Virus record (IMG/VR): IMGVR_UViG_3300003322_000571
Location: 62,001-126,000 of that record
Reading direction: 5' to 3' (one strand)
DNA length: 64,000 nucleotides
The notes under the pieces are model-generated. The model had not been told where the DNA came from. It worked only from the letters and a program-made list of their open reading frames with translations, and searched no databases. This document shows, piece by piece, positions 1-63,481 of this stretch (the stretch's first letter is position 1; every line of letters begins with the position of its first letter). The position numbers were made by a program, and so were the translations under genes.

Positions 1-183
1 TGTAGAGCAGATGCGAAGAACTTCACGCTTGAACAGCGATCGTCCGTATTTCCTGACGCTAGCTCTGATACGATTACCCGAACCTAAATAGTCATCTGTG
101 CTCGCATTCTCCCCTGAATGTACGCCAATGTAAAATTGGTTTGTGTCAATGTTGACGGTCTTGTAAACAATGTGCTCTCTCAT
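1..183 (-). CDS. Seg-like GIY-YIG homing endonuclease, N-terminal part (truncated by window edge; absent from the ORF track)
   Basis: Reverse strand reads GGAGG-N6-ATG then MREHIVYKTVNIDTNQFYIGVHSGENASTDDYLGSGNRIRASVRKYGRSLFKREVL, matching the Seg family pattern (VY..N....YIG.H....D.Y.GSG...KYG...FKRE.L). ATAAATA lies upstream (201-207). Confidence 0.88.
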   Translation of the reverse strand, partial: MREHIVYKTVNIDTNQFYIGVHSGENASTDDYLGSGNRIRASVRKYGRSLFKREVLRICST

Positions 184-292
184 GATACCCCTCCAACGCT
201 TATTTATGGACTTGCATTGCGATTGGTCCAGACTTCCCTGAGAAGATCGATCCGATCACTCGTCAACTCAAGTTGTACAACTAAGTACACCT

Positions 293-390
293 GCCAGCGT
301 TTCTAATATTGGCCTTAGGGGTGCCCTTATAAAGCACTAAGACCCGTCTAGATCAGGCGGTTAATGTGGGTTCGATTCCCATCGCTGGTA
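293..390 (+). tRNA. tRNA with anticodon UAU (Ile/AUA by anticodon) and a long variable arm
   Basis: Acceptor GCCAGCG/CGCTGGT with discriminator A390; D-arm TCTAA/TTAGG; anticodon arm GTGCC-CTTATAA-AGCAC; variable stem CCGTCT/AGGCGG; T-arm GTGGG-TTCGATT-CCCAT. CCA is not encoded. Confidence 0.88.
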
Positions 391-434
391 CACACAACCC
401 TAATATTTCTGTTGGGGTAACGTACTCAACCATA

Positions 435-440
435 TATACT
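435..440 (+). promoter_or_regulatory. sigma70-type -10 element (TATACT) for the small-RNA transcript starting at ~447
   Basis: TATACT ends 6 nt before the first paired base of the Y-like RNA; no clear -35. Confidence 0.5.
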
Positions 441-446
441 TTCTTC

Positions 447-515
447 AGCTGTTGCGTAGTTCAAGGGTTACTTCTTTTGGTGAAACTATCCCCTTGACGT
501 TTTAATCTCAGCTTT
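447..515 (+). ncRNA. candidate minimal Y RNA (Ro60 ligand)
   Basis: Terminal stem AGCTG(447-451)/CAGCT(509-513) with a U tail; helix GT[T]CAAGGG(459-467)/CCCTTGAC(491-498) with a single bulged pyrimidine, as in the GU[C]CGAG/CUUGAC Ro60 site of animal Y RNAs; 1.1 kb upstream of a Ro60 gene. Confidence 0.65.
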
Positions 516-526
516 AACATATGTAC

Positions 527-588
527 GCACGTGGGTGCAAGGTTAACTGTTCCCGTCTCATGACCGGACGTTAGTCTCCACGCTGCCA
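527..588 (+). ncRNA. tRNA-like remnant or mimic with a CAU-type loop, ending in CCA, with no T-arm
   Basis: GCACGTGG/CCACG[C]TGC closing stem, GGTTAA D-loop-like segment, CTCATGA (557-563), CCA at 586-588, followed by a terminator. Confidence 0.4.
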
Positions 589-599
589 ACTTTTGGTTG

Positions 600-640
600 A
601 AGCCCTGGTATGCAACACTGCTACCAGGGCTTTTCCTTTT
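600..640 (+). terminator. intrinsic terminator of the RNA cluster
   Basis: AAGCCCTGGTA...TACCAGGGCTT followed by TTCCTTTT. Confidence 0.8.
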
Positions 641-652
641 TGGAGAAAATAA

Positions 653-1057
653 ATGTCGCTAGGTACAATTAAAGATGTCGTAATTGCTACGGTGGATGTC
701 GCTAATCTCAACAATCGCGTTTACCCAAAGAACGTGATTGAAGAAGCTGTTCGTCAGCGTGTTCATCCGATTTTCGGCCGAGTCGGTATGCCGGAAGCAG
801 GATCGTCTTGTGAGGTCGACCTTCGTGATGTATCACATCAAGTTACCGATCTCCGAATCACCGAAGATGGTAACTTGACTGGCACAGTTGTCGTCCTTGA
901 CACGCCTCCCGGTAGGTTGCTGACATCATTGTTGACAGAGAACCTCGACATCACCTTCCGCATGGCAGGATATGGTGATCTAATTGATAAGGATGGATAC
1001 ACAGAAGTGACCAACTTTCGTCTATCATCGATCAATGCTGTCGCAGACGGTGCTTGA
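653..1057 (+). CDS. T4 gp21-like prohead protease paralog, catalytic residues lost
   Basis: NLNNRVYP, GRVGMP (cf. GELNHP), VSH, LDTPPG, TFRMAGYG (cf. GVSSRGLG), SINAV (cf. GVDAV). Confidence 0.8.
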   Translation: MSLGTIKDVVIATVDVANLNNRVYPKNVIEEAVRQRVHPIFGRVGMPEAGSSCEVDLRDVSHQVTDLRITEDGNLTGTVVVLDTPPGRLLTSLLTENLDITFRMAGYGDLIDKDGYTEVTNFRLSSINAVADGA

Positions 1058-1075
1058 TCTCATTAAGGGTCAACC

Positions 1076-1375
1076 ATGAAACTCCTCGAAGAACTTGAAG
1101 CACAGTTTACTGATGGTCGTCAACTGTCTTCTGAACTGTTTGGTTACATCTTGCGTTGGTATCAAACAGGTGAGATCGACAAAGTTGATGAGCTGCTGAA
1201 GTCGATCGAGTTCAAGCCCACGATGCTGCATGTTGCTGCTGGCGTGATCCGTATCACAGCAGGCTGGCGACACCTTCTTCCGTCTTGGGAAGAAGCAAAG
1301 GATCGGGCGGTGTTGGCGATCACGGAAAGTGGTCATGATCCTCACAAGCTGTTAATGGGAGTTCGTCCGTTATGA
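1076..1375 (+). CDS. hypothetical protein
   Basis: SD present; stop overlaps the next start. Confidence 0.7.
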   Translation: MKLLEELEAQFTDGRQLSSELFGYILRWYQTGEIDKVDELLKSIEFKPTMLHVAAGVIRITAGWRHLLPSWEEAKDRAVLAITESGHDPHKLLMGVRPL

Positions 1376-1560
1376 AACGTGACATCAAAGATCATCCGTT
1401 ATTGAAAACGATGACGGCTGAGCAACTGTTGCAAATGCTCGTTGATGTTCGAGAAGTTGCATGGGTCGAAGGCCAAGATGGACGAACGAAAGAAGATTTT
1501 TACAACGCTTTAACGCAAATTTGTCGCATCACACGTGATGTTGACAACTACCATTTTTAA
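1372..1560 (+). CDS. hypothetical protein
   Basis: ATGA coupling with the previous ORF. Confidence 0.65.
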   Translation: MKRDIKDHPLLKTMTAEQLLQMLVDVREVAWVEGQDGRTKEDFYNALTQICRITRDVDNYHF

Positions 1561-1573
1561 CTGGAGAAACGAT

Positions 1574-3250
1574 ATGTCAAAACTCAATCCAACTGGTCGT
1601 AACGTTACGACAAACATTGTTGCGGTTGCTGCGAACCGTGGTGAACAGCTTGCTGTTTCTGCGAATGGCAACTTGCAATTCAAGAAGGACTCCTACCAGA
1701 CGTTGTACGAAACAACTGTTTCGACGATGCTTGGCAAGGGCAACCAACTGAATTCTGCTGATGCGCTTGTGCAAAAGCTGAAGGCGTCCGTTCGTTCTGT
1801 TGTTGCTGATGGCGCCAGCTCATTCGACTTCATTGCGAACCTCGCAATCCACGCACGTACGGAGATGAACGTCCGTACGATCCCAATCGTTCTTGTGGTT
1901 GAATTTGCGAAGGCGCTCGCCGATCAGCGTCAACCGTTGGTTGCACGTGTTGATGCGATTGAACAAGAACTGACTACAGCTCGTAAGGCTAAGCGTGCGA
2001 CTTCGTCAATCGTTGAGCGCCTGACTGCAGCTCGCGAAGACGCTGAAATCTACACGTATGGCAACATGCGTCAGCTCGTCAATGACGTGATTCAGCGTGC
2101 CGACCAGATCACTGATCTGTACGCATATGCACTGCAAGTGTTCGGTGGCAAGAACAAGATCCCGATGGCGATCAAGCGTGGTGTTGCTGATGCTTTCAAC
2201 AAGTTCAGCGAATACGCGTTCGCGAAGTACAACCGTGACGGTGCTGTCAAGTTCCGTGACGTCCTTCGTATCGTTCACCCAACTGCTTCGACGATCAAGC
2301 AAGGCGAAATCTTTGACAAGATCATGAAGGATACGCTTTCCGTCCCGTACACTTGGGAAACTGAGTTGTCGGCCAACGGTCAGAAGCCAGTTGCAGAACG
2401 TCTGACGCAGAAGCAGCTGTGGACGCAGCTCGTCACGTCTGGTAAGGTCGGTTACATGGCGTTGCTCCGCAACCTGCGTAACATCATCAGTGCTGGTCTT
2501 GATGACGATGTTGTCAAGAAGCATGTTCTCGATGTGATCTCCGATCCTGCACGCGTTGCAAAGAGCAAGCAATTGCCGTATGACTTCATTGAAGCATACA
2601 ACATCGTCAAGCCACTTGACGGTCGTTTCGCAACCGCAGTGTCGAAGGCACTTGATGCTAGTGCTGCGAACTTGCCAGAACTTGGTAAGCGCGTGTGGCT
2701 GATTGTTGACTACTCCGGCTCGATGGGTCATGGTCCGACTTCTGCATTCGGCGGTGGTGTGTTCCTCGCTTCGGCATTGCTGAAGGCTGCAGGTTCGACT
2801 GCTTCTCGTCTTGCTGTGACGTTGTTCGGTTCGACTGCATTGACGTTGAAAGACGTTGATACGAACCATTCGATGCTCGGTCTCCAGCAGATCCTCGAAA
2901 GCTACCGTAAGGATGGCATCAGCGGTTCGACGAATTTCCGTGCAGCTCTTGACCAGAAGTCTCAGCTCGGTTTCGAACCTGACACGATCATTGTGATCAC
3001 TGACGGTGAAGTCAATGGCTTCCCGTACGGCGTGATCAAGAACGTTGCAGGTCGTAGCGTGATGAAGATGGCAGTCAACATGTCTGTTGCAACATCGACT
3101 CCGATGTCGCAGCATGACGGCTGGTATTCAATGGCAGGCTGGTCTCCAGCTATGTTCAAGTGGATCCCGGCAATGCGTGACGCCGGTTCTGTAATCGAAC
3201 AGCTTGCTGTTCCTTACAAGGGTGTCCCTTCAGCTAAGGTTGAAGAATAA
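1574..3250 (+). CDS. rsr: Ro60/Rsr-like TROVE + vWA RNA-binding protein
   Basis: TROVE features (IQRADQIT, KRGVADAFNKFSEYAFAKY, RDVLRIVHP, TWETELS, GYMALLRNLRN, SKQLPY) plus vWA MIDAS (DYSGSM, GSTNF, ITDGE). Start set at the ATG after GGAGA. Confidence 0.93.
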   Translation: MSKLNPTGRNVTTNIVAVAANRGEQLAVSANGNLQFKKDSYQTLYETTVSTMLGKGNQLNSADALVQKLKASVRSVVADGASSFDFIANLAIHARTEMNVRTIPIVLVVEFAKALADQRQPLVARVDAIEQELTTARKAKRATSSIVERLTAAREDAEIYTYGNMRQLVNDVIQRADQITDLYAYALQVFGGKNKIPMAIKRGVADAFNKFSEYAFAKYNRDGAVKFRDVLRIVHPTASTIKQGEIFDKIMKDTLSVPYTWETELSANGQKPVAERLTQKQLWTQLVTSGKVGYMALLRNLRNIISAGLDDDVVKKHVLDVISDPARVAKSKQLPYDFIEAYNIVKPLDGRFATAVSKALDASAANLPELGKRVWLIVDYSGSMGHGPTSAFGGGVFLASALLKAAGSTASRLAVTLFGSTALTLKDVDTNHSMLGLQQILESYRKDGISGSTNFRAALDQKSQLGFEPDTIIVITDGEVNGFPYGVIKNVAGRSVMKMAVNMSVATSTPMSQHDGWYSMAGWSPAMFKWIPAMRDAGSVIEQLAVPYKGVPSAKVEE

Positions 3251-3282
3251 CACTCGTTGAAGGTCAACGACCAACGCAAGAT

Positions 3283-3310
3283 AATAGCCCCGAAAGGGGC
3301 TATTCCTTTT
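3283..3310 (+). terminator. intrinsic terminator after Ro60
   Basis: AATAGCCCC-GAAA-GGGGCTATT-CCTTTT. Confidence 0.8.
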
Positions 3311-3322
3311 GGAGAATACAAA

Positions 3323-3748
3323 ATGGACAACAGAATTTTCAATGTCAACGGACGTGGCCTATCGATGTTGACGTCAACGCTTAAGCTAGCGTTTTGGCAA
3401 AATGCAGGATGCTATGACAAGAGTCAAGACACTGAAACAGTCAAGGGATACACCGTCGAAAAAGACAAAGGCTTGATTTTGCTCTGGGCTGTTGACGAAA
3501 AAGATCCATCACATCAAAAATTCATCGCACCGTTGACAGCTGAAGCCGTCGCACCGCTCGTTGATTTGTGGCTGAAGTCAGACGAAGCGAAACAAATCCC
3601 GTTTGAGCGATGGGAGGATGATTGCGATCATGACGGACACAACACTCTCGGTTGGCGTGTATATTGTGAAGATTGGGGCCATGTAGGAAGGGCAGGATGG
3701 CATGCAACAATTGCAATCAAGCCTGTTTATCTGTGGCACGGCAAATAA
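3323..3748 (+). CDS. hypothetical protein
   Basis: GGAGA SD before ATG 3323; Trp/Gly-rich C-terminus. Confidence 0.75.
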   Translation: MDNRIFNVNGRGLSMLTSTLKLAFWQNAGCYDKSQDTETVKGYTVEKDKGLILLWAVDEKDPSHQKFIAPLTAEAVAPLVDLWLKSDEAKQIPFERWEDDCDHDGHNTLGWRVYCEDWGHVGRAGWHATIAIKPVYLWHGK

Positions 3749-3813
3749 GGGGATAGGTAACTCCTCAACTATTACCTGTAAGTAACGATAACCATAACTA
3801 AAAAGGGTCACTT

Positions 3814-5136
3814 ATGTCAAGTCATGTATTGACGCTCTTCAACCCGATTGTTAGAGCGATTAAAAAGGGATACGTTCAGTATCAGAATCGAAAAGAAGAT
3901 AAAGCGTGGAACACTCTCCGTGCGGAAGAACTTGCAAAACTCGATAGTAAATCTCATAATTGGTACACCGTATTGGTCGATAATCAACTGAAGACAGTTC
4001 GTGGCCAAAAGGAATTGAACGCGAACCGCCAACAAAAGGTTGATGCATCGTACTTCGAATTCTTGTTCAAACTGGGATGCAAGGTTGCACGAGAGTATGC
4101 TGTACTACCAAACATCATCGGCATGCAGCCGTTGCATAGTCCTGTTGGTTTGGTGTATCACATGGAGTACACACAAAAACCAGTCACTTCAGAGCAAAAT
4201 GATGTTGGAAGTGCCGATATCGGTAAGTATCGCCTTGAAGTGATCAGTCATGCTGTCGTTGCATTGACTGAAAGGTTGAGCACCCACGTTGATCCTAACG
4301 TAGCTACTGTCCTGGGACAGAAGGATAAGACACTAGTTGACAAGTTAGTTGACGTTCTCGGGGGAGAAATCGCTCGTGAAATGCTGATTGACATTCTTAA
4401 CGATTTGAGACATCTCGGTCGTCAGAACAGAAATCACTTTGAAGTCATCACCGCATCTGACAGTCATAAAGCAGTATATCTCAACAAAATCTGCAATGAG
4501 ATTGCTGCAGAAACACGACGAGGCCCTGCGAATTGGATTATCGCATCGATTTCAACGGTTTCGAAATTGCAAAGTGCGCCGTTCTCATACTTTAGCTCTG
4601 GTAAGTCCAACCGTGATAGCAGTTTGCTGTTAATGCACGTTGGTCGGCTTAATGGAGTAATTGAAGTTTACGCTTCAACAGAGGTCAAAGACGATGAGAT
4701 TTTGATTGGCTACATGGGCGGTAACGGCGCCACAGATACAGGTTACGTATTTGCTCCATATATTCCTGTTGTTCCAGGTAATGTTGTACTTGATCCTGTA
4801 ACACTTGAGCCGATGGTTGAATTCATGACTCGCTACGGTAAAACCGCATTTAAGAATCTGTCGGACGATTTTGGCAACCTTGTAATCCCACGTCATTCTA
4901 CAGGTGAAAAATACTACCGCATTGTTGAATTCGCAGAACCTAAAGAAGGCGTATACGATCCAACCGCGCTCGTTGAAGATTTTGTGTTCCCTGCGACTAA
5001 AGAACCTCAGTTTCTTGCACCTCTAACAGAGCAATTGCTTGGTAAATCGAACCTTAATATCGAAGAAGACTCGTCTGTTGAGTTGAAAACAAACCTTCCA
5101 GATAGTACTGAGGTGAACGATAAACCGTTCGTATAA
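3814..5136 (+). CDS. divergent T4 gp23/gp24-family capsid protein paralog
   Basis: IIGMQPLHSPVGLVY, TRRGPANWIIAS, GRLNGVIEVY, LIGYMG...DTGYVFAPYIP, DPVTLEP...FMTRYG. Confidence 0.85.
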   Translation: MSSHVLTLFNPIVRAIKKGYVQYQNRKEDKAWNTLRAEELAKLDSKSHNWYTVLVDNQLKTVRGQKELNANRQQKVDASYFEFLFKLGCKVAREYAVLPNIIGMQPLHSPVGLVYHMEYTQKPVTSEQNDVGSADIGKYRLEVISHAVVALTERLSTHVDPNVATVLGQKDKTLVDKLVDVLGGEIAREMLIDILNDLRHLGRQNRNHFEVITASDSHKAVYLNKICNEIAAETRRGPANWIIASISTVSKLQSAPFSYFSSGKSNRDSSLLLMHVGRLNGVIEVYASTEVKDDEILIGYMGGNGATDTGYVFAPYIPVVPGNVVLDPVTLEPMVEFMTRYGKTAFKNLSDDFGNLVIPRHSTGEKYYRIVEFAEPKEGVYDPTALVEDFVFPATKEPQFLAPLTEQLLGKSNLNIEEDSSVELKTNLPDSTEVNDKPFV

Positions 5137-5154
5137 CAATAAGGAATAAAAACC

Positions 5155-5325
5155 ATGTCCAATCAAGTTACTTTCCCAAAGGGCAAGCAAGTCAATCGCA
5201 GTGGTGAACGCACTCGTTTGACGCGTCAAACGACCGTCACTGTTATCCGTAGCGAACCAGCTCGTGACGGCAAGACTCGCGTGTTCTGGAAGTCGCATCG
5301 CGGCGAAGCTAACGCACTCGTCTAA
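5155..5325 (+). CDS. small basic protein, 56 aa (not in track)
   Basis: AAGGA SD, MSNQVTFPKGKQVNRSG...; terminator follows. Confidence 0.7.
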   Translation: MSNQVTFPKGKQVNRSGERTRLTRQTTVTVIRSEPARDGKTRVFWKSHRGEANALV

Positions 5326-5346
5326 TCACAATAGACATTGATCATC

Positions 5347-5372
5347 AACACCGCCCTCGTGGCGGTGTTTTT
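5347..5372 (+). terminator. intrinsic terminator
   Basis: AACACCGCC-CTCGT-GGCGGTGTT-TTT. Confidence 0.8.
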
Positions 5373-5406
5373 GTTCCTGTTTGTTTTCCCCTGCAACTAT
5401 AAGATA

Positions 5407-5681
5407 GTCCGTGAAATACCGGGCGCAATTATGGCTTTGGGAGGTTAGCGTTCGTGCTAATATACCATTCGTTAGGCGGCTTGCAGCGCATAGAACGATA
5501 AACGGCGGAGGGATCCAGGCGTCAATGCCTCCCTTGACTGAAGCAAAACTGATTGACTAACCTTTGATAAAGGCGGCGGGGTACGGCTCTGCTAGTGACC
5601 GGCTGGCCTAACTTCGTGTTGCATAACTACGCTGGGAATCCCGGCTATACCTCCATCGTTTGCATGAGATAACCGGTGGAC
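5407..5681 (+). ncRNA. candidate ~275-nt structured RNA of unknown family
   Basis: No credible ORF in the gap; nested helices 5407-5422/5673-5681, 5423-5433/5622-5632, 5471-5477/5606-5612; possible pseudoknots 5521-5526/5552-5557 and 5440-5449/5644-5654; -10-like TATAAGAT at 5398-5405. Confidence 0.5.
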
Positions 5682-5696
5682 ATTTAAGGAGAGATT

Positions 5697-6257
5697 ATGA
5701 AAGAGATTGAGCGAAAATTCTTGGTTAACTCTGCTCAGTTCAACAGAGACATCAGTGTGCTCGAGAACTACGGAGTGGACATTGTCAAGTATTCGATCAT
5801 GCAAGGTTACTTGTCGACGGGTATTGATATGCCGATTCGCATCCGGCATCGATCGCATTTTGATCCAGTTGCCGTTGCAACGGTCGATGCTTACACGATG
5901 ACTGTTAAGGCTAATCGTACTGGTATCACGTGCGATGAGATCGAGTTCGATATCCCTGGTGATAAGTTTAATCAGCTGTTTAGGCTTTGTGGTGATAACG
6001 TTCTGGTAAAGTCGCGTTATGTCGTACCTTATCGAGGCAGTATTTGGGAAGTTGACATGTTTCATGGGGACTTACAAGGCCTTGTTGTTGCGGAGATTGA
6101 ATTGCAACATGAGGATGATCTTTTCGTACATCCTGTGTGGGTTGATACTCAAGTAACTGCCGACTCGCGGTATGCTAATGCGAACCTCGTGAAGCAGACG
6201 TTTGACATCCTAAGTAACGAATTGGTATGGAAGAATGTTGAACGATTTAGGGTTTAA
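5697..6257 (+). CDS. CYTH-domain (triphosphate tunnel) protein
   Basis: EIERKFLV, IMQGYL, RIR, KSRY, WEVDMFHG..GLVVAEIEL. Confidence 0.9.
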   Translation: MKEIERKFLVNSAQFNRDISVLENYGVDIVKYSIMQGYLSTGIDMPIRIRHRSHFDPVAVATVDAYTMTVKANRTGITCDEIEFDIPGDKFNQLFRLCGDNVLVKSRYVVPYRGSIWEVDMFHGDLQGLVVAEIELQHEDDLFVHPVWVDTQVTADSRYANANLVKQTFDILSNELVWKNVERFRV

Positions 6258-6274
6258 AGGTTAAAGTCACCAAC

Positions 6275-6472
6275 ATGAGCAAACCACACTATCACAAAGA
6301 CGAACGCGGCATTCTGCAAAAGTGCTATCACGGTGCACAGAATTTGCTGACCGATTACAAGTTTTGGATCGGCGTCACATTGAGTTTCCCTCTCGAACAT
6401 TTCATCTGGGAGAAGCTGTGGCCTTTCTATCTGATCTCCGAATGGCTCGGTCTAATTGACCATCTCCACTGA
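6275..6472 (+). CDS. small membrane protein
   Basis: Hydrophobic FWIGVTLSFPLEHFIWEKLWPF segment. Confidence 0.65.
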   Translation: MSKPHYHKDERGILQKCYHGAQNLLTDYKFWIGVTLSFPLEHFIWEKLWPFYLISEWLGLIDHLH

Positions 6473-6645
6473 TGGACGAGTTTAATCCGTACGATCCTGA
6501 GCTTGCGCAACAGATCACAGAACATGCACAGAGATTACTAGATGGTCTTTTGAAGAGTTCCCATCTGCAAAGTAACTCTCCTGTCCAACAGTGGTTCGAA
6601 GCCAATCCACAACTACCTTTCAATGATTTCTGGAATCCAAAATGA
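6472..6645 (+). CDS. hypothetical 57-aa protein (not in track)
   Basis: MDEFNPYDPELAQQI...; translationally coupled at both ends. Confidence 0.55.
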   Translation: MDEFNPYDPELAQQITEHAQRLLDGLLKSSHLQSNSPVQQWFEANPQLPFNDFWNPK

Positions 6646-7790
6646 GCAAATTTGCTGTTGAAGTCGTCCGTATCCGCGCAATCGAACCGATCACCGGAGC
6701 TGACGCAATTGAACTCGCTGTTGTTGGTGGCTACCGTTCTGTCGTTAAGAAGGGTGACTACAAAGTCGGCGATCTCGCCGTGTACATTCCTGAACAAGCA
6801 ATCGTCCCTGATTGGTTGCTCGAAAGGATGAATCTCACTGGTCGTCTTGCTGGGACGAATAAGAACCGCGTAAAAGCAATCAAGCTTCGCGGTTGTCTGT
6901 CACAAGGTTTGCTGATTCCCGTCAAGCATGTTGCAGCTTCCGGTGCGAACTACATTCAGAATGATGTAAGTCTGATTCCTGTTAAGGAAGGCGATGACGT
7001 TGCTGATTTCCTTGGTATCGTTAAGCATGAAGTGCCGATCCCCGCACACCTTGCTGGTGAAGTGTACAACGCAGGTAGCCACTTGACTGTTCCGTACGAT
7101 ATCGAGAACTACAAGAAGTTCGTCGATGTGTTTGAAGATGGTGAAGAAGTCGTGTTCACCGAAAAACTGCATGGCACATTCACCGGTATCGGTATTCTGC
7201 CGCGTGGTGATTGGGAGGAAAAGCACTTCCTCAGCCGTTTCGTTATCTTCAGCAAGGGACTTGGTGCACGAGGTCTGTGCTTCAAGGATTGCGATAACAA
7301 CGCAGACAATCTGTACGTTCGCACGCTGATGGAGTCCGACATCTTCTCTCGTCTGTCTGACCTGATGGAGGAGATGGAAGAAGAGCACGGCTTTGATCGT
7401 CCTTTGTTCCTGCTCGGAGAAACGTTCGGTGCAGGTGTACAAGACTTGCAGTACGGTAACCTGCCGGCTTCGTTCCGCCTGTTTGACGTATGCGTTGGCT
7501 ACCGCGGTGATCAGTTCTTCTTCGACTACGAAGGTCGTGTCCGCCTCGCGAACCATCTTGAAATTCCGATGGTTCCGATTCTGTACAAGGGTCCGTTCAG
7601 CCAAGCGGTGCTCGATCAGTACACGAATGGCAAGGAAACGGTTTCTGGTAAGGAATCACACATCCGCGAAGGTGTTGTGATCACTCCTGTCGTTGAACGT
7701 GAACATCCTGAACTCGGCCGTGTGATCTTGAAGTCTGTCTCTGCAGACTACCTGCTTCGCAAGAATGAAAACGCAACGGAGTACAACTGA
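6642..7790 (+). CDS. RNA ligase, DRB0094/Rnl5 family
   Basis: N-terminal IEPITGADAIE module; motif I TEKLHGT, GETFG, FDV, EGVV, LKSVSADYL. Confidence 0.92.
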   Translation: MSKFAVEVVRIRAIEPITGADAIELAVVGGYRSVVKKGDYKVGDLAVYIPEQAIVPDWLLERMNLTGRLAGTNKNRVKAIKLRGCLSQGLLIPVKHVAASGANYIQNDVSLIPVKEGDDVADFLGIVKHEVPIPAHLAGEVYNAGSHLTVPYDIENYKKFVDVFEDGEEVVFTEKLHGTFTGIGILPRGDWEEKHFLSRFVIFSKGLGARGLCFKDCDNNADNLYVRTLMESDIFSRLSDLMEEMEEEHGFDRPLFLLGETFGAGVQDLQYGNLPASFRLFDVCVGYRGDQFFFDYEGRVRLANHLEIPMVPILYKGPFSQAVLDQYTNGKETVSGKESHIREGVVITPVVEREHPELGRVILKSVSADYLLRKNENATEYN

Positions 7791-32393: not shown

Positions 32394-32460
32394 AGCGAAG
32401 TCCCACGTCGTTGAGGTCTTCTGAAACCACATATATACTCTTACAAGATTGGGAGTTTAT

Positions 32461-34900: not shown

Positions 34901-36160
34901 ATGTCATTCAACATGATTAAGGAAGCCCAAGCGCGCCTTGCGCTTGGGAATAAACTGTCAGTCGCAGAACACGTTCAGAAGGTTCTCGGCGACGTGACAT
35001 TGTCAGAAGTAAAGAGCATCGTTGAATCGTTTAACAAGGCCGACTTCCAAATTACACCAGAAGACTATAGTCGTTGGTTGGAAGTCGTTGTTGAGCTGAT
35101 GCAACAACACGGCGGGAGCCGTAAGCGTGACTTCATGGACATTGCACTAGACGTTGTTCTCGACAACGATCCAAAGTTTGATCTACTTGGTGGCGATCAA
35201 GAAGCATTGAAAGCACAAGTTGCAAACACTTTGTGGCAGACATACAAGGCTTCGAAGGCACACTCCGAAGTCGCCGGTAATGTCAATTCAACAATTCAAC
35301 AAGCGCGCGAAGAAGAGGAAGCAATTGCTGACTTGATGTCAGTATGCGACGACAACGAGCGTGAAGAGGAAGAGTCTGGCGGTGGGTTTGAGCAAGCCCT
35401 TAAGACTACGATGAATATCGATTCTGCTCAAGAAGAAGAGCACGATGGCAATCCTTATCCTGTAGGAACAATGCGTCATGCACTGTGGAAGGATGTCAAC
35501 AAGAGCAAGATGTTTAAGTCCGGCCACAACATTGTCAAGAAAGCAAAGGAAGAAGAGGAATTCGACGATATCGAACTCGATGACGATATCGATATCGATA
35601 CTACTCAGATGTCTGCCGAAGACTTGGCCTCTCGTATTGTTGGTAAGGCAGGTATCGACGATTACGAGACATCTGATACTGGTGATCAGACAGATGTCGA
35701 AGCTCGTATCGAAGACCTTGAAGCACGTATTAAGGAACTCGAATGTGACGCTGATGCGGACACAGAAGAAATCGACAGCGATACGCTAGACATCGATTAC
35801 GATAGTCTCGGCAATGATCGTCCAGGTGCTGCACAAGTGATCGGTGTTTCTATTCCAGCTTCTGGTAAGGAAGACGAACGTTTCCGCGATAAGCCAGACT
35901 TCGACGACGAAGAGTCAACAAAGAAGTTCTTCCGTACTGCTTTGACATCTCCTAAGGAAATGATGTCTCAAGCAATCAAGGACATTGAAGCAGAAGGGGC
36001 AGAAGCTTGGAAGAAGTTGCAGTTCCCAAAGAATCCACATCCTAAGAAGTCACAGGCTTTCAGGGCGTGGGAAAAGGGAATGAAGAACGCCGCAAAGGAT
36101 CACCTTGGATTCAAGGACAAGCCGGTGCAAATTACTAGTAAACCTGCCCGTAAAAAGTAA
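34901..36160 (+). CDS. late, highly acidic protein (repeated EEE), probable head/scaffold component
   Basis: ATAAATA promoter; repeated xxEEE(E) segments. Confidence 0.7.
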   Translation: MSFNMIKEAQARLALGNKLSVAEHVQKVLGDVTLSEVKSIVESFNKADFQITPEDYSRWLEVVVELMQQHGGSRKRDFMDIALDVVLDNDPKFDLLGGDQEALKAQVANTLWQTYKASKAHSEVAGNVNSTIQQAREEEEAIADLMSVCDDNEREEEESGGGFEQALKTTMNIDSAQEEEHDGNPYPVGTMRHALWKDVNKSKMFKSGHNIVKKAKEEEEFDDIELDDDIDIDTTQMSAEDLASRIVGKAGIDDYETSDTGDQTDVEARIEDLEARIKELECDADADTEEIDSDTLDIDYDSLGNDRPGAAQVIGVSIPASGKEDERFRDKPDFDDEESTKKFFRTALTSPKEMMSQAIKDIEAEGAEAWKKLQFPKNPHPKKSQAFRAWEKGMKNAAKDHLGFKDKPVQITSKPARKK

Positions 36161-62042: not shown

Positions 62043-63481
62043 TATACACCTTTAGATTCTAGTTGTGCAACTCGTGCACGTAGGTCTTGCACTTCCTTAA
62101 CGAGAAGTGGTACGAGTTTGCTGAAATCGACACTCCACGGGTGTGTCTTCTCGTTGTCGCCACCAACCGTGACAGCTGCAGGAACCACGTCATACAGTTC
62201 TTGTGCAATAAATCCGGTTACCACGCGACCGATGTCTTCCTTGAATTCGAAGTCGCGAACGCGCATGTTATCGAACTTGTCACCTTGACTAGGTGTATCG
62301 ACAATGTTTGTCTTCAAACGTTCATCAGACGACGTATTGAATGCTACCGTTGTAGTAGAGTTCTGGTAGATGCCTCCGTTTTGTGTGCCGGAAGTGTTAT
62401 AGCAAGCGAAGTGCCATCCTGTGCCTCCTACAGCTGAAGGATTTAGCTGGGACTGTACACCGTAGCCGAGGCCATCACCAAAGTTATCAATAAACAACGC
62501 ACAATCAGCAGCCCCTGTCGAAGCAGACACGCTGAGTTTTGCATTTCCTGTACCGATGCTGGACGAACCCAATCGATTGACGATGAGATTGCCGGTATTG
62601 GTCAATCGCATCCAGGCTGTTGCGGTCGAACCGGTATTGTTTGAACCACCTGCTCCATACCAGGCATGCGAACCATCACTAAAGACGTCATAGCTACCTG
62701 TATTGGTCAGTGTAGATGATGGCACACGAACTGAAGTAGCATCCAACGTACCAGTAAAGTAATGGCCGATAAGGTTCCTCTGTGTCCATGTAGGTGCTCC
62801 ATTGGTGGAGTCAATCGTGATCGCTAGGTTGGTCCGATCTCCTTGACGGAAAGAACGAATCGACCCGTTAACGACAAGTGCAGCACCAGAAGCAGCAGCA
62901 GAGCCGATCACGACTTCGCCAACTGGCGTAACACGCATACGTTCCGTATTAGCCGTCGCAACCACCAAAGCTTGCGTGGAACCGTTCGCGTTAATCCAGC
63001 AAGTATTACTGCGGCTAAGGTGTGTAGAACCATACGAAGAGAGACGAAGCAGATTATCATTACCTGTAATTCGTGCTTCACAAAAGTCAACGTTGCTTGT
63101 CGACGTTGATGTGAAATTGACCGTTGTCGTGACAGCCGAAGAAACATCTAGTTTTCCGCTTGGTGAAGCTGTACCAATACCAACATTACCGCCGGACAAC
63201 ACAAATTGATTAGTACCAGCGACAAGTCCGTTCGTAGGCAAAATCAATGTACCTGTCATCGTGTCGCCGGCCTTCAGCACATAGTTTGAACCGACGGGAA
63301 CATCAACCCACGTCAAGTTACCTGCACCGTCTGTAACAAGTGCTTGGCCTGATGAACCGTTACTATTGGGGAATTTAAGCGTACGTGTCGTCGTTAGATT
63401 GCTAGAATCAAGACGCAGTTTGTTGAGACCGACATCAAACGTGTTGTTTGCTGTGCCGGCTTGTTTTGGATAGAAAGCCAT
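62042..63481 (-). CDS. tail fibre with C-terminal S74 intramolecular chaperone
   Basis: L.TDG.GNL.W, GDTMTG, GNVGIGT; SDERLKTNI, GFIAQE. Confidence 0.88.
   Translation of the reverse strand: MAFYPKQAGTANNTFDVGLNKLRLDSSNLTTTRTLKFPNSNGSSGQALVTDGAGNLTWVDVPVGSNYVLKAGDTMTGTLILPTNGLVAGTNQFVLSGGNVGIGTASPSGKLDVSSAVTTTVNFTSTSTSNVDFCEARITGNDNLLRLSSYGSTHLSRSNTCWINANGSTQALVVATANTERMRVTPVGEVVIGSAAASGAALVVNGSIRSFRQGDRTNLAITIDSTNGAPTWTQRNLIGHYFTGTLDATSVRVPSSTLTNTGSYDVFSDGSHAWYGAGGSNNTGSTATAWMRLTNTGNLIVNRLGSSSIGTGNAKLSVSASTGAADCALFIDNFGDGLGYGVQSQLNPSAVGGTGWHFACYNTSGTQNGGIYQNSTTTVAFNTSSDERLKTNIVDTPSQGDKFDNMRVRDFEFKEDIGRVVTGFIAQELYDVVPAAVTVGGDNEKTHPWSVDFSKLVPLLVKEVQDLRARVAQLESKGV

What the first reader, a model, noticed from the sequence alone, without database searches (positions are those of the whole stretch)
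447..515. Minimal animal-type Y RNA upstream of phage Ro60
Seen: a ~70-nt hairpin starting 7 nt after TATACT, with an AGCUG/CAGCU terminal stem plus U tail and a GU[U]CAAGGG/CCCUUGAC helix. Established: animal Y RNAs bind Ro60 through GU[C]CGAG/CUUGAC with one bulged base, whereas bacterial YrlA RNAs are longer tRNA mimics. Inference: a stripped-down Y RNA consisting of little more than the Ro60 site, with a bulged U instead of C, which tRNA-like YrlA models would probably miss.
Basis: partly seen in the sequence, partly recalled or inferred. Interest (0 to 1): 0.78.

Follow-up and report, generated by a model that had tools for sequence, protein, structure and literature searches.

The report
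Short phage Y-like RNA near Ro60

Summary
The hairpin at 447-513 exists as described. It lies 7 nt after a conserved sigma-70-like promoter (TTGGGG, 17 nt, TATACT).

- **Significance alone:** on its own it folds no better than chance (z -1.6).
- **Homologues:** copies lie upstream of Ro60 genes in related jumbo phages. A model built from 12 of them finds over 50 members. Nearly all are on the Ro60 strand, and 44 of 50 lie within 800 nt upstream of the gene. Cultured Arthrobacter, Rhizobium and Xanthomonas phages have copies; four large phages absent from the listed Ro60 hits have none.
- **Structure:** both stems covary strongly (94% paired against 41-50% in slid controls).
- **Conserved parts:** the 5' internal-loop motif (U/G)GCGUAG, an invariant UACUU, and a 3' CUUU..UCUC.
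the sequence GU[U]CAAGGG/CCCUUGAC and its bulge are not conserved, and Rfam's animal Y_RNA model finds nothing.
- **Link to YrlA:** long members carry a T-arm, acceptor and D-arm insert. These score 31-56 bits on Rfam YrlA, below its 69-bit cut-off. One lies elsewhere in this genome.

I read it as a short Y-like RNA, closest to YrlB, Yrn2 and phage phiLo Yrl2, and a new member of a known kind. Neither Ro60 binding nor a discrete transcript could be tested.

The parts
412..417 (+). -35-like hexamer TTGGGG of the RNA's own promoter
   Evidence: Sequence. GTTG lies 19-21 nt before CATATATA in the window, L046, L048, L049, L050, L051 and L005. The same two-part motif occurs about 10 times in the genome, once directly before a tRNA gene.
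435..440 (+). -10 hexamer TATACT, within the conserved CATATATACT at 431-440; the spacer to the -35 is 17 nt
   Evidence: CATATATAMT occurs twice in the window against 0.07 expected. It is conserved upstream of every close homologue.
447..451 (+). S1 5' strand (AGCUG); the predicted transcript start is about A447
   Evidence: It pairs with 509-513. In relatives the pairs are GCUG/CAGC, GAUG/CAUC, UUCG/CGAA, GGGG/CCCC, GAGG/CCUC and ACUG/CAGU.
452..459 (+). Conserved 5' internal-loop motif UUGCGUAG; proposed Ro60 docking motif (CGUA is nt 9-12 of the RNA)
   Evidence: Across 51 members the column frequencies are G9 90%, C10 94%, G11 100%, U12 82%, A13 84% and G15 73%. It resembles GNCGAAN0-1G (PMC4201824). 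It also resembles CGAA at nt 10-13 of phiLo Yrl2 (PMC12135203). The binding role is inferred.
459..467 (+).
   Evidence: It pairs with 491-498. Of the 8 pairs in 12 homologues, 6 show changes on both sides, so the structure is kept while the sequence is free. The bulge is present in only 3 of 12.
468..474 (+). Invariant junction UUACUUC
   Evidence: U, C, U and U are at 100% and A at 98% in 51 members, short and long alike.
475..490 (+). Apical mini-hairpin: pyrimidine-rich loop UUUUGGU closed by UUC/GAA (472-474 with 482-484), then ACUAUC
   Evidence: It is almost identical in Arthrobacter phage Atuin, which reads GUUACUUCAUUUGGCGAAACUAUC. In long members this position holds the tRNA-like insert.
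491..498 (+). S2 3' strand CCCUUGAC
499..508 (+). 3' internal loop GUUUUAAUCU, matching the family consensus CG-(A)CUUU-N-UC(U/C)C
   Evidence: Column frequencies: U174 94%, C178 94%, C180 98%.
509..513 (+). S1 3' strand CAGCU
529..586 (+). Predicted stable hairpin in the spacer between the Y-like module and the terminator; role unknown
   Evidence: The fold of 446-645 has z -3.46. It is only partly alignable, mainly with L051. It is not a second family copy: R1 scores it 3.7 bits.
600..641 (+). Terminator-like hairpin (600-610 with 622-632) followed by UUUCCUUUUU, then the RBS and ATG 653
   Evidence: GAAGCCC...GGGCUUUUUCUUU is conserved in position in five relatives.
1574..3250 (+). Ro60 orthologue (TROVE + VWA), the presumed protein partner
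   Evidence: Pfam TROVE at 7e-21 and VWA_2 at 3e-6. PHROG 850, RNA-binding protein. The nearest solved structure is Thermus phage phiLo Ro60, 9KOP/9L5Y, E 3.7e-14.

Best explanation
Window 447-513 encodes a short Y-RNA-like non-coding RNA of a 350-kb T4-like jumbo phage. It is the minimal form of a modular RNA family that accompanies phage Ro60 genes.

**Shown**
- It has a conserved sigma-70-like promoter placed so that transcription should begin at the foot of stem S1.
- It folds as S1 (447-451/509-513), an asymmetric internal loop, S2 (459-467/491-498) and a tiny pyrimidine-rich apical hairpin.
- Both stems are maintained by compensatory changes.
- The same scaffold in other family members carries a T-arm, acceptor hairpin and D-arm insert of the YrlA type at the apex.
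- Family members cluster on the Ro60 strand just upstream of Ro60 genes.

**Inferred**
- The RNA docks on the outer face of the Ro60 ring (gene 1574-3250). Docking is through the conserved 5'-strand motif UUGCGUAG (452-459) in the internal loop, the counterpart of the bacterial GNCGAAN0-1G / phiLo 'CGAA' motif. S2 serves only as a spacer helix.
- The invariant UACUUC and the apical loop form the effector or gating end. They would tether Ro60 to a nuclease such as host PNPase, or control access to the Ro60 cavity. This would redirect RNA decay or repair during infection, as described for Deinococcus, Salmonella and phage phiLo.
- The primary transcript probably runs to the conserved terminator at about 641, or reads through into the Ro60 operon, and is trimmed back to S1.
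For: **Homologues and structure**
- Homologues lie upstream of Ro60 in L046-L051, L005 and L010, with the promoter, GUUGCG and GUUACUUC conserved and both helices varying.
- Covariation on 12 sequences: 90.4% of cells paired against 40-50% in slid controls, score 0.728 against 0.19 or less, 0 of 500 shuffles.
- On 51 sequences: 94.2% paired, and all 12 pairs show changes on both sides.

**Association with Ro60**
- Model R1 found 71 hits at E<=1 in 537 kb searched on both strands, 70 of them on the Ro60 strand.
- 44 of 50 hits at E<1e-3 lie within 800 nt upstream of Ro60.
- Independent hits beside Ro60 in cultured phages: Atuin 53.4 bits, RHph_TM39 33.5 bits and Tenjo 29.9 bits. They sit side by side with sub-threshold Rfam YrlA hits.
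- No hit at E<0.01 in T4, phiKZ, KVP40 or GAP32, 1.05 Mb in total.
- Ro60 phages without an adjacent copy carry copies elsewhere in the genome.

**Link to YrlA**
- Long members match Rfam YrlA RF02553 at 32-56 bits with E from 4e-10 to 3e-3.
- The own genome holds five members, including a 140-nt form with a T-arm and D-arm.

**Literature**
[quoted passage not shown] - phiLo Ro60 binds a stem-bulge-stem hairpin whose mapped stem-bulge region spans nt 4-59. Its CGAA lies at nt 10-13, and mutating CGAA lowers affinity (PMC12135203).
- phiLo Ro60 is the nearest solved relative of this protein.
Against: - No transcript data exist: no RNA run was listed. The ends of the RNA are therefore predictions.
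- The motif is CGUA, not CGAA. In the closest relatives only GUUGCG is invariant, so its equivalence with GNCGAA is a resemblance, not a demonstrated homology.
- Rfam YrlA never reaches its 69-bit cut-off on any family member. The same search gave sub-threshold matches at E<=1 in 13 of 14 control genomes.
- Four of the five copies in this genome are far from Ro60, near tRNA genes. A Ro60-independent role cannot be excluded.
- All loci were chosen because they hold Ro60. Only the positional and strand clustering and the four Ro60-less control phages address that bias.
Confidence: 0.72

Rival explanations
1. It is an animal-type minimal Y RNA. Ro60 would recognise the bulged helix GU[U]CAAGGG/CCCUUGAC in the same way that vertebrate Ro60 recognises GGUCCGA/UUGACC.
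For: The window sequence does contain CUUGAC opposite a one-base bulge. The helix is real.
Against: - The helix sequence is not conserved even among Ro60 proteins 64-73% identical to this one. L048 has UGAAUGAGUG/CACUCAUCA and L046 has UGAAGUGUG/CACACUUUG.
- The bulge is present in only 3 of 12 homologues.
- Rfam Y_RNA gives no hit at E<=10.
- Family members link to YrlA-type tRNA-like RNAs, not to metazoan Y RNAs.
Confidence: 0.05
2. It is a cis-acting 5' leader or attenuator of the Ro60 operon. The structured RNA, possibly bound by Ro60 itself, would control read-through of the terminator at 600-641 into ORF 653 and on to Ro60. That would make it autoregulatory rather than a trans-acting cofactor.
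For: - The order is promoter, structured RNA, terminator, RBS, gene.
- In L048, L050 and L051 the terminator is followed directly by the Ro60 start, and I saw no obvious promoter between them.
Against: - Family copies occur in tandem arrays of 2-4 (L007, L010, L013, L043).
- Copies occur downstream of Ro60 (L024, L017, L031).
- Copies occur tens of kb away from Ro60, between tRNA genes.
- The hairpin-plus-UUCCUUUUGGAGAA design recurs before other genes, for example at 3286-3325. It is therefore a general intergenic feature.
- This rival is not exclusive of the main explanation. YrlA and YrlB of M. smegmatis are processed from a precursor upstream of rsr (PMC4201824).
Confidence: 0.12
3. It is a conserved phage small RNA of the tRNA-cluster type. 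It would work without Ro60, for example as a tRNA-related decoy or a processing signal, and sits near Ro60 only because both travel with tRNA and RNA-repair islands.
For: - Four of the five copies in this genome lie away from Ro60, beside tRNA genes.
- A tRNA-Ile(UAU)-like gene lies 57 nt upstream at 293-390.
- Many related loci are rich in tRNA genes.
Against: - Copies are tightly placed and share the Ro60 strand in unrelated phage types: a 43-kb Xanthomonas phage, an actinophage, Rhizobium phages and T4-like jumbo phages.
- None was found in tRNA-rich phages absent from the listed Ro60 hits, including KVP40 and T4.
- The long forms are YrlA-like.
Confidence: 0.08
4. It is a chance hairpin with no function.
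For: The single-sequence fold is unremarkable: z -1.63, with 16 of 200 shuffles folding as well.
Against: Conservation, covariation and positional clustering all argue against this.
Confidence: 0.01

Closest known systems
Yrl2 (and Yrl1) of Thermus phage phiLo (PMC12135203; PDB 9L5Y)
   Same: - It is phage-encoded and lies upstream of the phage Ro60 gene.
- It is a simple stem-bulge-stem hairpin without a tRNA-like domain.
- The CG(A/U)A motif sits in the 5' strand of the bulge at almost the same distance from the 5' end (nt 10-13 there, nt 9-12 here).
- phiLo Ro60 is the nearest solved relative of the window's Ro60.
   Different: - The motif here is CGUA, not CGAA.
- I could not obtain the phiLo RNA sequences, so no alignment or R1 test was made.
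- The window RNA belongs to a family with an invariant UACUUC junction and with long tRNA-like members. Neither is reported for phiLo.
- Binding is shown for phiLo and only inferred here.
YrlB of Salmonella and M. smegmatis, and Yrn2 of D. radiodurans (PMC4201824)
   Same: - It is a second, shorter Ro60-bound RNA encoded beside Ro60.
[quoted passage not shown]
- It co-exists with a tRNA-like Y RNA in the same genome.
- It may be processed from a longer precursor.
   Different: - YrlB homologues were found only within Salmonella by sequence search. Here the short form is a widely conserved sequence family.
YrlA, Rfam RF02553 (bacterial and phage tRNA-like Y RNAs)
   Same: - The architecture is the same: a 5'/3' stem, an internal loop, a second stem, then the effector domain.
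- Long relatives of the window RNA carry the T-arm, acceptor hairpin and D-arm core and match RF02553 at 31-56 bits.
- The placement beside Ro60 is the same.
- The 3' loop ACUU(U/G) resembles the Rfam consensus AaAcUuG.
   Different: - The window copy has no tRNA-like domain and does not match RF02553 at all.
- No family member reaches the 69-bit cut-off.
- The 5' motif is (U/G)GCGUAG rather than GNCGAAN0-1G.
Metazoan Y RNA, Rfam RF00019
   Same: - The terminal stem is formed by the 5' and 3' ends.
- The loop is pyrimidine-rich.
- The partner protein family is Ro60.
- By chance, CUUGAC lies opposite a bulge in this one sequence.
   Different: - There is no model match.
- The 'Ro60 helix' sequence and its bulge are not conserved among homologues.
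- The promoter is bacterial, with no Pol III-type U tail.

Membership tests
Metazoan Y RNA (Rfam RF00019) | Match to the family covariance model at or above 38 bits | tested here: not met
   There was no match at E<=10 in window 150-700 or in the whole 350-kb genome.
Metazoan Y RNA (Rfam RF00019) | Sequence-conserved bulged helix (GGUCCGA / UUGACC type) that Ro60 reads | tested here: not met
   The S2 sequence differs in every homologue and covaries. The bulge is present in 3 of 12.
Metazoan Y RNA (Rfam RF00019) | Long stem formed by the 5' and 3' ends | tested here: met
   S1 plus S2 are supported by covariation.
YrlA (Rfam RF02553) | Match to the family covariance model at or above 69 bits | tested here: not met
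   There was no match at E<=10 for the window copy. The best match in the genome is 20 bits at 1225-1278. Long relatives score 31-56 bits.
YrlA (Rfam RF02553) | tRNA-like effector domain (T-arm, acceptor-like hairpin, D-arm) | tested here: not met
   The apex of the window copy is a 7-nt loop on a 3-bp stem. The domain is present in long relatives and in the genome's 1180-1319 copy.
YrlA (Rfam RF02553) | GNCGAAN0-1G motif near the 5' end | tested here: inconclusive
   The window has UGCGUAG at 453-459, matching 4 of the 6 specified positions. The family consensus is (U/G)GCGUAG, and some members read UGCGAAG.
YrlA (Rfam RF02553) | Encoded within about 2 kb of Ro60 on the same strand | tested here: met
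   It lies 1,059 nt upstream on the same strand. The family shows the same placement.
Short hairpin Y RNAs (YrlB / Yrn2 / phiLo Yrl2) | Stem-bulge-stem hairpin with no tRNA-like domain and a small pyrimidine-rich loop | tested here: met
   The loop region is CUUCUUUUGGU.
Short hairpin Y RNAs (YrlB / Yrn2 / phiLo Yrl2) | CGAA motif in the bulge, 5' strand | tested here: inconclusive
   The window has CGUA at nt 9-12 from the predicted start. L007 homologues have CGAA.
Short hairpin Y RNAs (YrlB / Yrn2 / phiLo Yrl2) | Physically bound by the cognate Ro60 | not testable with these tools
An EMSA or a pull-down is needed.
Short hairpin Y RNAs (YrlB / Yrn2 / phiLo Yrl2) | Accumulates as a discrete small RNA | not testable with these tools
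   No RNA run was listed that holds this sequence.
Phage Ro60-associated scaffold family defined here (model R1) | S1, (U/G)GCGUAG, S2, UACUUC, apex, S2', CUUU..UCUC, S1', scored by model R1 | tested here: met
   It scores 77.9 bits, E 4e-19. The window copy is one of the 12 seed sequences, so this is met by construction. Independent members are found.

The most novel reading that the evidence does not exclude
The family may be a modular adaptor set. A constant Ro60-docking scaffold (S1, GCGUAG loop, S2, UACUUC) would present interchangeable 'heads'. The heads seen are a mini-hairpin, anticodon-like hairpins, a lone T-arm, or a full tRNA-like domain. One phage would encode several of these: five in this genome, and arrays of 2-5 in others.

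Each RNA would aim the single phage Ro60 at a different partner or target. The targets could be tRNAs damaged by host anticodon nucleases, which would fit the RNA ligase, CYTH and PTH2 genes in these loci.

In the window's short form and about a third of its short-form relatives, the loop carries UGGN. That could pair with the tRNA 3'-NCCA end, as T-box and RNase P RNAs do.
Probability: 0.15. Interest if true: 0.75.

Novelty: new member of a known kind. Interest (0 to 1): 0.45.

Why it matters
Phage Ro60/Y-RNA systems are barely characterised. The only biochemistry I found is for Thermus phage phiLo (2025).

This locus shows that the short hairpin class of Y-like RNA is not an oddity of one species. 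It is a sequence-conserved family found from actinophages to 350-kb jumbo phages, and no Rfam 15 model detects it.

The family shares one scaffold with tRNA-like YrlA-type RNAs. This suggests that the tRNA-like domain is an exchangeable insert.

The comparison also moves the probable Ro60 contact from the variable helix to a conserved 5'-strand loop motif. That gives a clean mutational test. Model R1 could be used to annotate Y-like RNAs in phage genomes.

Tried and rejected
- **Rfam 15 on the window and on 150-700 at E<=10:** only a tRNA hit at 293-390 plus two spurious weak hits.
- **ARAGORN on the window:** nothing.
- **Megablast of 1-6000 against phages:** nothing.
- **The search for related loci with the single Ro60 protein:** nothing. 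An alignment of homologues was needed.
- **Second degenerate family copy at 516-600:** rejected. R1 scores it 3.7 bits with filters off, although it is partly alignable with L051.
- **Canonical YrlA at Rfam's cut-off in 29 metagenomic and 7 cultured-phage loci:** none.
- **RNA-seq evidence:** no RNA run was listed. The DNA comes from a root metagenome.
- **Protein-RNA complex prediction:** not folded by the tool. It is not evidence either way.
- **phiLo Yrl sequences or accession:** not given in the held text, and phiLo did not appear in the listed tblastn hits. No direct comparison was possible.
- **UGGN / tRNA-NCCA pairing as a general feature:** not general. UGG is in the apical loop of about a third of short members.
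- **Alignment of the Rfam YrlA stems to the family's stems:** ambiguous. cmscan forces S2 onto YrlA stem 1 with many mismatches. I do not claim stem-by-stem homology.

Full report
**Where the window lies.** The window is bases 62001-126000 of a 350,089-bp IMG/VR phage record with direct terminal repeats. The DNA is held by a root-metagenome run.

The first 8 kb encode these genes on the + strand:

| Coordinates | Product |
|---|---|
| 653-1057 | prohead-protease-like protein |
| 1076-1375, 1372-1560 | two small ORFs |
| 1574-3250 | Ro60 orthologue (TROVE 7e-21 plus VWA) |
| 3323-3748 | 141-aa ORF |
| 3814-5136 | Gp23-type major head protein |
| 5697-6257 | CYTH protein |
| 6642-7790 | RNA ligase |

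The nearest solved structure to the Ro60 is that of Thermus phage phiLo (9KOP/9L5Y, E 3.7e-14). No cultured phage has a Ro60 more than about 33% identical.

**The observation.**
- TATACT lies at 435-440.
- Stem S1 is AGCUG 447-451 with CAGCU 509-513.
- Helix S2 is G459, one bulged U (460 or 461), then C462-G467, pairing with C491-C498.
- RNAfold predicts the same helices, but the energy is ordinary: -16.2 kcal/mol, z -1.63, and 16 of 200 shuffles fold as well.

The hairpin is therefore not significant on its own. Rfam finds no Y_RNA or YrlA match in 150-700 even at E<=10. It finds only a tRNA-like hit at 293-390.

**Homologues.** The Ro60 protein has hundreds of relatives on large metagenomic contigs. 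I fetched six loci whose Ro60 proteins are 65-73% identical to this one and 44 more distant IMG/VR loci.

Each of the six close loci carries a homologous element upstream of Ro60 on the same strand. In L048, L050 and L051 it lies directly before the Ro60 start. In the window, L046, L047 and L049 it is separated from Ro60 by one to three small genes.

Among the close relatives the conserved parts are:
- the promoter, GTTG followed 19-21 nt later by CATATATA(C/A/G)T;
- GCUGUUGCG;
- GUUACUUC and the apical UUUUGGUGAAA;
- UCUCAGCUU;
- a terminator hairpin, GAAGCCC...GGGCUUUUUCUUU, about 85 nt downstream.

L048 reads UGAAUGAGUG/CACUCAUCA and L046 reads UGAAGUGUG/CACACUUUG. The extra base is present in only 3 of 12 aligned homologues.

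**Structure.**
- On 12 short homologues, RNAalifold returns S1 and S2, and 10 of 12 pairs show compensatory changes.
- Pair counting gives 90.4% of cells paired against 40-50% when the partners are slid. The covariation score is 0.728 against 0.19 or less, and no shuffle of 500 reaches it.
- On the 51-member alignment, which was fitted to the model, 94.2% of cells are paired and all 12 pairs change on both sides.
- S1 appears as GCUG/CAGC, GAUG/CAUC, UUCG/CGAA, GGGG/CCCC, GAGG/CCUC and ACUG/CAGU.

**The family.** A covariance model, R1, was built from the 12 short forms.
- It found 71 hits at E<=1 in 537 kb searched on both strands, and 70 were on the Ro60 strand.
- Of 50 hits at E<1e-3 in 27 loci, 44 lie within 800 nt upstream of the Ro60 start and 4 lie downstream of the gene.
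- Copies often come in tandem arrays of 2-4 (L007, L010, L013, L043).
- The 51 aligned members (52-140 nt) form a graded series. About half are short, with a mini-hairpin at the apex. Others carry an extra hairpin or a lone T-arm. At least seven carry a T-arm, an acceptor-like hairpin and a D-arm.
- Those long forms, and YrlA-like elements beside Ro60 in cultured phages, match Rfam YrlA (RF02553) below its 69-bit cut-off:

| Locus | Bits |
|---|---|
| Tenjo | 55.9 and 38.8 |
| L043 | 44.5 |
| CcrColossus | 42.3 and 30.5 |
| L040 | 38.9 |
| L010 | 37.2 |
| RHph_TM39 | 36-37 |

Chen et al. 2014 reported Y-like RNAs in CcrColossus (cited in PMC12135203).

The window RNA is therefore the short form of a scaffold that in other copies carries a YrlA-type tRNA-like domain.

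**Independent members and controls.**
- In cultured phages, R1 hits lie beside Ro60 in Arthrobacter phage Atuin (53.4 bits), Rhizobium phage RHph_TM39 (33.5 bits) and Xanthomonas phage Tenjo (29.9 bits).
- The Atuin apex, GUUACUUCAUUUGGCGAAACUAUC, is almost the window's, although the two Ro60 proteins are about 27% identical.
- Ro60 phages without an adjacent copy carry copies elsewhere: 3, 5 and 2 copies in G002, G003 and Ralstonia phage RsoM2USA.
- T4, phiKZ, KVP40 and GAP32 (1.05 Mb) are not among the listed Ro60 hits. They give nothing at E<0.01; the best score is 19.7 bits.
- The window's own genome holds five members:

| Genome position | Score | Form |
|---|---|---|
| 62446-62515 | 77.9 bits | the finding |
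| 349904-350022 | 50.6 bits | T-arm, between tRNA genes |
| 35291-35370 | 41.8 bits | anticodon-like apical hairpin |
| 1180-1319 | 28.3 bits | 140 nt, with T-arm, acceptor hairpin and D-arm |
| 1645-1739 | 17.4 bits | T-arm |

**What is conserved, and the likely Ro60 site.** Across 51 members the constant positions are as follows:
- the closing G-C pair of S1;
- the 5' internal-loop motif (U/G)GCGUAG, with G 90%, C 94%, G 100%, U 82%, A 84% and G 73%;
- AGAG/CUCU at the top of S2;
- UACUU at 98-100%, followed by C at 92%;
- a 3' loop, CG-(A)CUUU-N-UC(U/C)C.

The literature gives three relevant facts.
[quoted passage not shown] Its motif is GNCGAAN0-1G, near the 5' end, and it resembles the vertebrate GGUCCGA (PMC4201824; bioRxiv 10.1101/312249).
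- phiLo Ro60 binds two hairpin RNAs encoded upstream of its gene. Yrl2 is a stem-bulge-stem with CGAA at nt 10-13, and mutating CGAA lowers affinity (PMC12135203).

The window RNA has CGUA at nt 9-12 counted from A447, in the same kind of bulge. Some family members read CGAA (L007).

I therefore assign the probable Ro60 contact to 452-459, and I read S2 as a spacer helix. This is an inference from resemblance and conservation, not a measurement.

**Expression signals.**
- TTGGGG (412-417), a 17-nt spacer and TATACT (435-440) form a sigma-70-like promoter.
- The two-part motif GTTG...CATATATA(C/G)T recurs about ten times in the genome. It occurs before a tRNA gene and, inside the window, at 32430 before a protein-coding ORF.
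- In relatives, S1 begins 6-9 nt after the -10 element. The RNA should therefore start at the foot of S1.
- There is no terminator at 515. The conserved one is at 600-641.
- The primary transcript is thus probably about 195 nt, or reads through into the operon, and would need trimming. YrlA and YrlB of M. smegmatis are processed in this way (PMC4201824).
- No RNA run holding this sequence was listed, and the complex predictor did not fold a protein-RNA pair.

**Verdict.** The 'animal-type' label, the proposed binding helix, the bulge and the U tail are not supported.

The RNA is best filed as a new member of the known class of short hairpin Y-like RNAs (YrlB, Yrn2, phiLo Yrl2). It belongs to a phage-wide sequence family that shares its scaffold with YrlA-type RNAs and that Rfam 15 does not detect.

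Ro60 binding and a discrete transcript remain untested.

Noticed in passing
window 293-390 (+): A 98-nt tRNA-like gene lies 57 nt upstream of the RNA. Its anticodon loop is CUUAUAA (UAU, Ile), and it has a long variable arm (5-bp stem, loop UAGAUCA).

Rfam tRNA scores it 32.4 bits, and ARAGORN does not call it in the window. ARAGORN does call the orthologues in L048 and L051 as tRNA-Ile(tat), 89-95 nt. The acceptor stem covaries among the three.

A long variable (class II-type) arm on an Ile(UAU) tRNA looks unusual to me.
   Followed up: partly
G000 (own genome) 1180-1319, 1645-1739, 35291-35370, 349904-350022; all outside the window: Four further members of the same RNA family lie far from Ro60, mostly among tRNA genes. 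One is a 140-nt form with a T-arm, an acceptor-like hairpin and a D-arm, so it is YrlA-like. Rfam YrlA scores it only 20 bits.
   Followed up: partly
window 653-5136; also L046, L047, L050, L051: The Ro60 gene sits inside head-morphogenesis genes. A prohead-protease-like ORF (134 aa, PHROG 207) lies upstream. A conserved ORF of about 141 aa of unknown function, and then a Gp23-type major head protein, lie downstream.

The order Ro60, 141-aa ORF, Gp23 is kept in relatives. Whether Ro60 is a virion or prohead component is open.
   Followed up: no
window 5697-7790; L046-L051 upstream regions: The neighbourhood looks like an RNA-repair or RNA-turnover island. The window has a CYTH protein and an Rnl-type RNA ligase with a PHA02142 OB domain. 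The relatives have PTH2 peptidyl-tRNA hydrolase, ADP-ribosylglycohydrolase and an Rv2179c-like 3'-5' exoribonuclease just upstream of the RNA.
   Followed up: no
window 431-440 and 32430-32439; genome-wide: A promoter class, GTTGAC-like -35 plus CATATATA(C/G)T, occurs about ten times in 350 kb. Several sites appear to precede RNA genes or structured regions: a tRNA at about 321220 on the minus strand, and a hairpin followed by a possible tRNA 5' end at about 184119. They may mark strongly expressed early stable-RNA units.
   Followed up: partly
window 600-655 and 3286-3325: An intergenic design recurs: a G+C-rich hairpin, then UUCCUUUUGGAGAA, then ATG. The terminator-like hairpins sit directly against the next gene's ribosome-binding site with no promoter between them.
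   Followed up: no
window 529-586 (+): A stable predicted hairpin lies between the Y-like module and the terminator. The whole stretch 446-645 folds with z -3.46. It aligns in part with L051 only, and it is not a second family copy (R1 3.7 bits).
   Followed up: partly
L010 3791-4414, L013 4005-4453, L007 3894-4458, L043 1357-1764: Tandem arrays of 3-4 family members lie immediately upstream of Ro60. They mix short and tRNA-like forms. This suggests repeated duplication, with gain or loss of the apical domain.
   Followed up: partly
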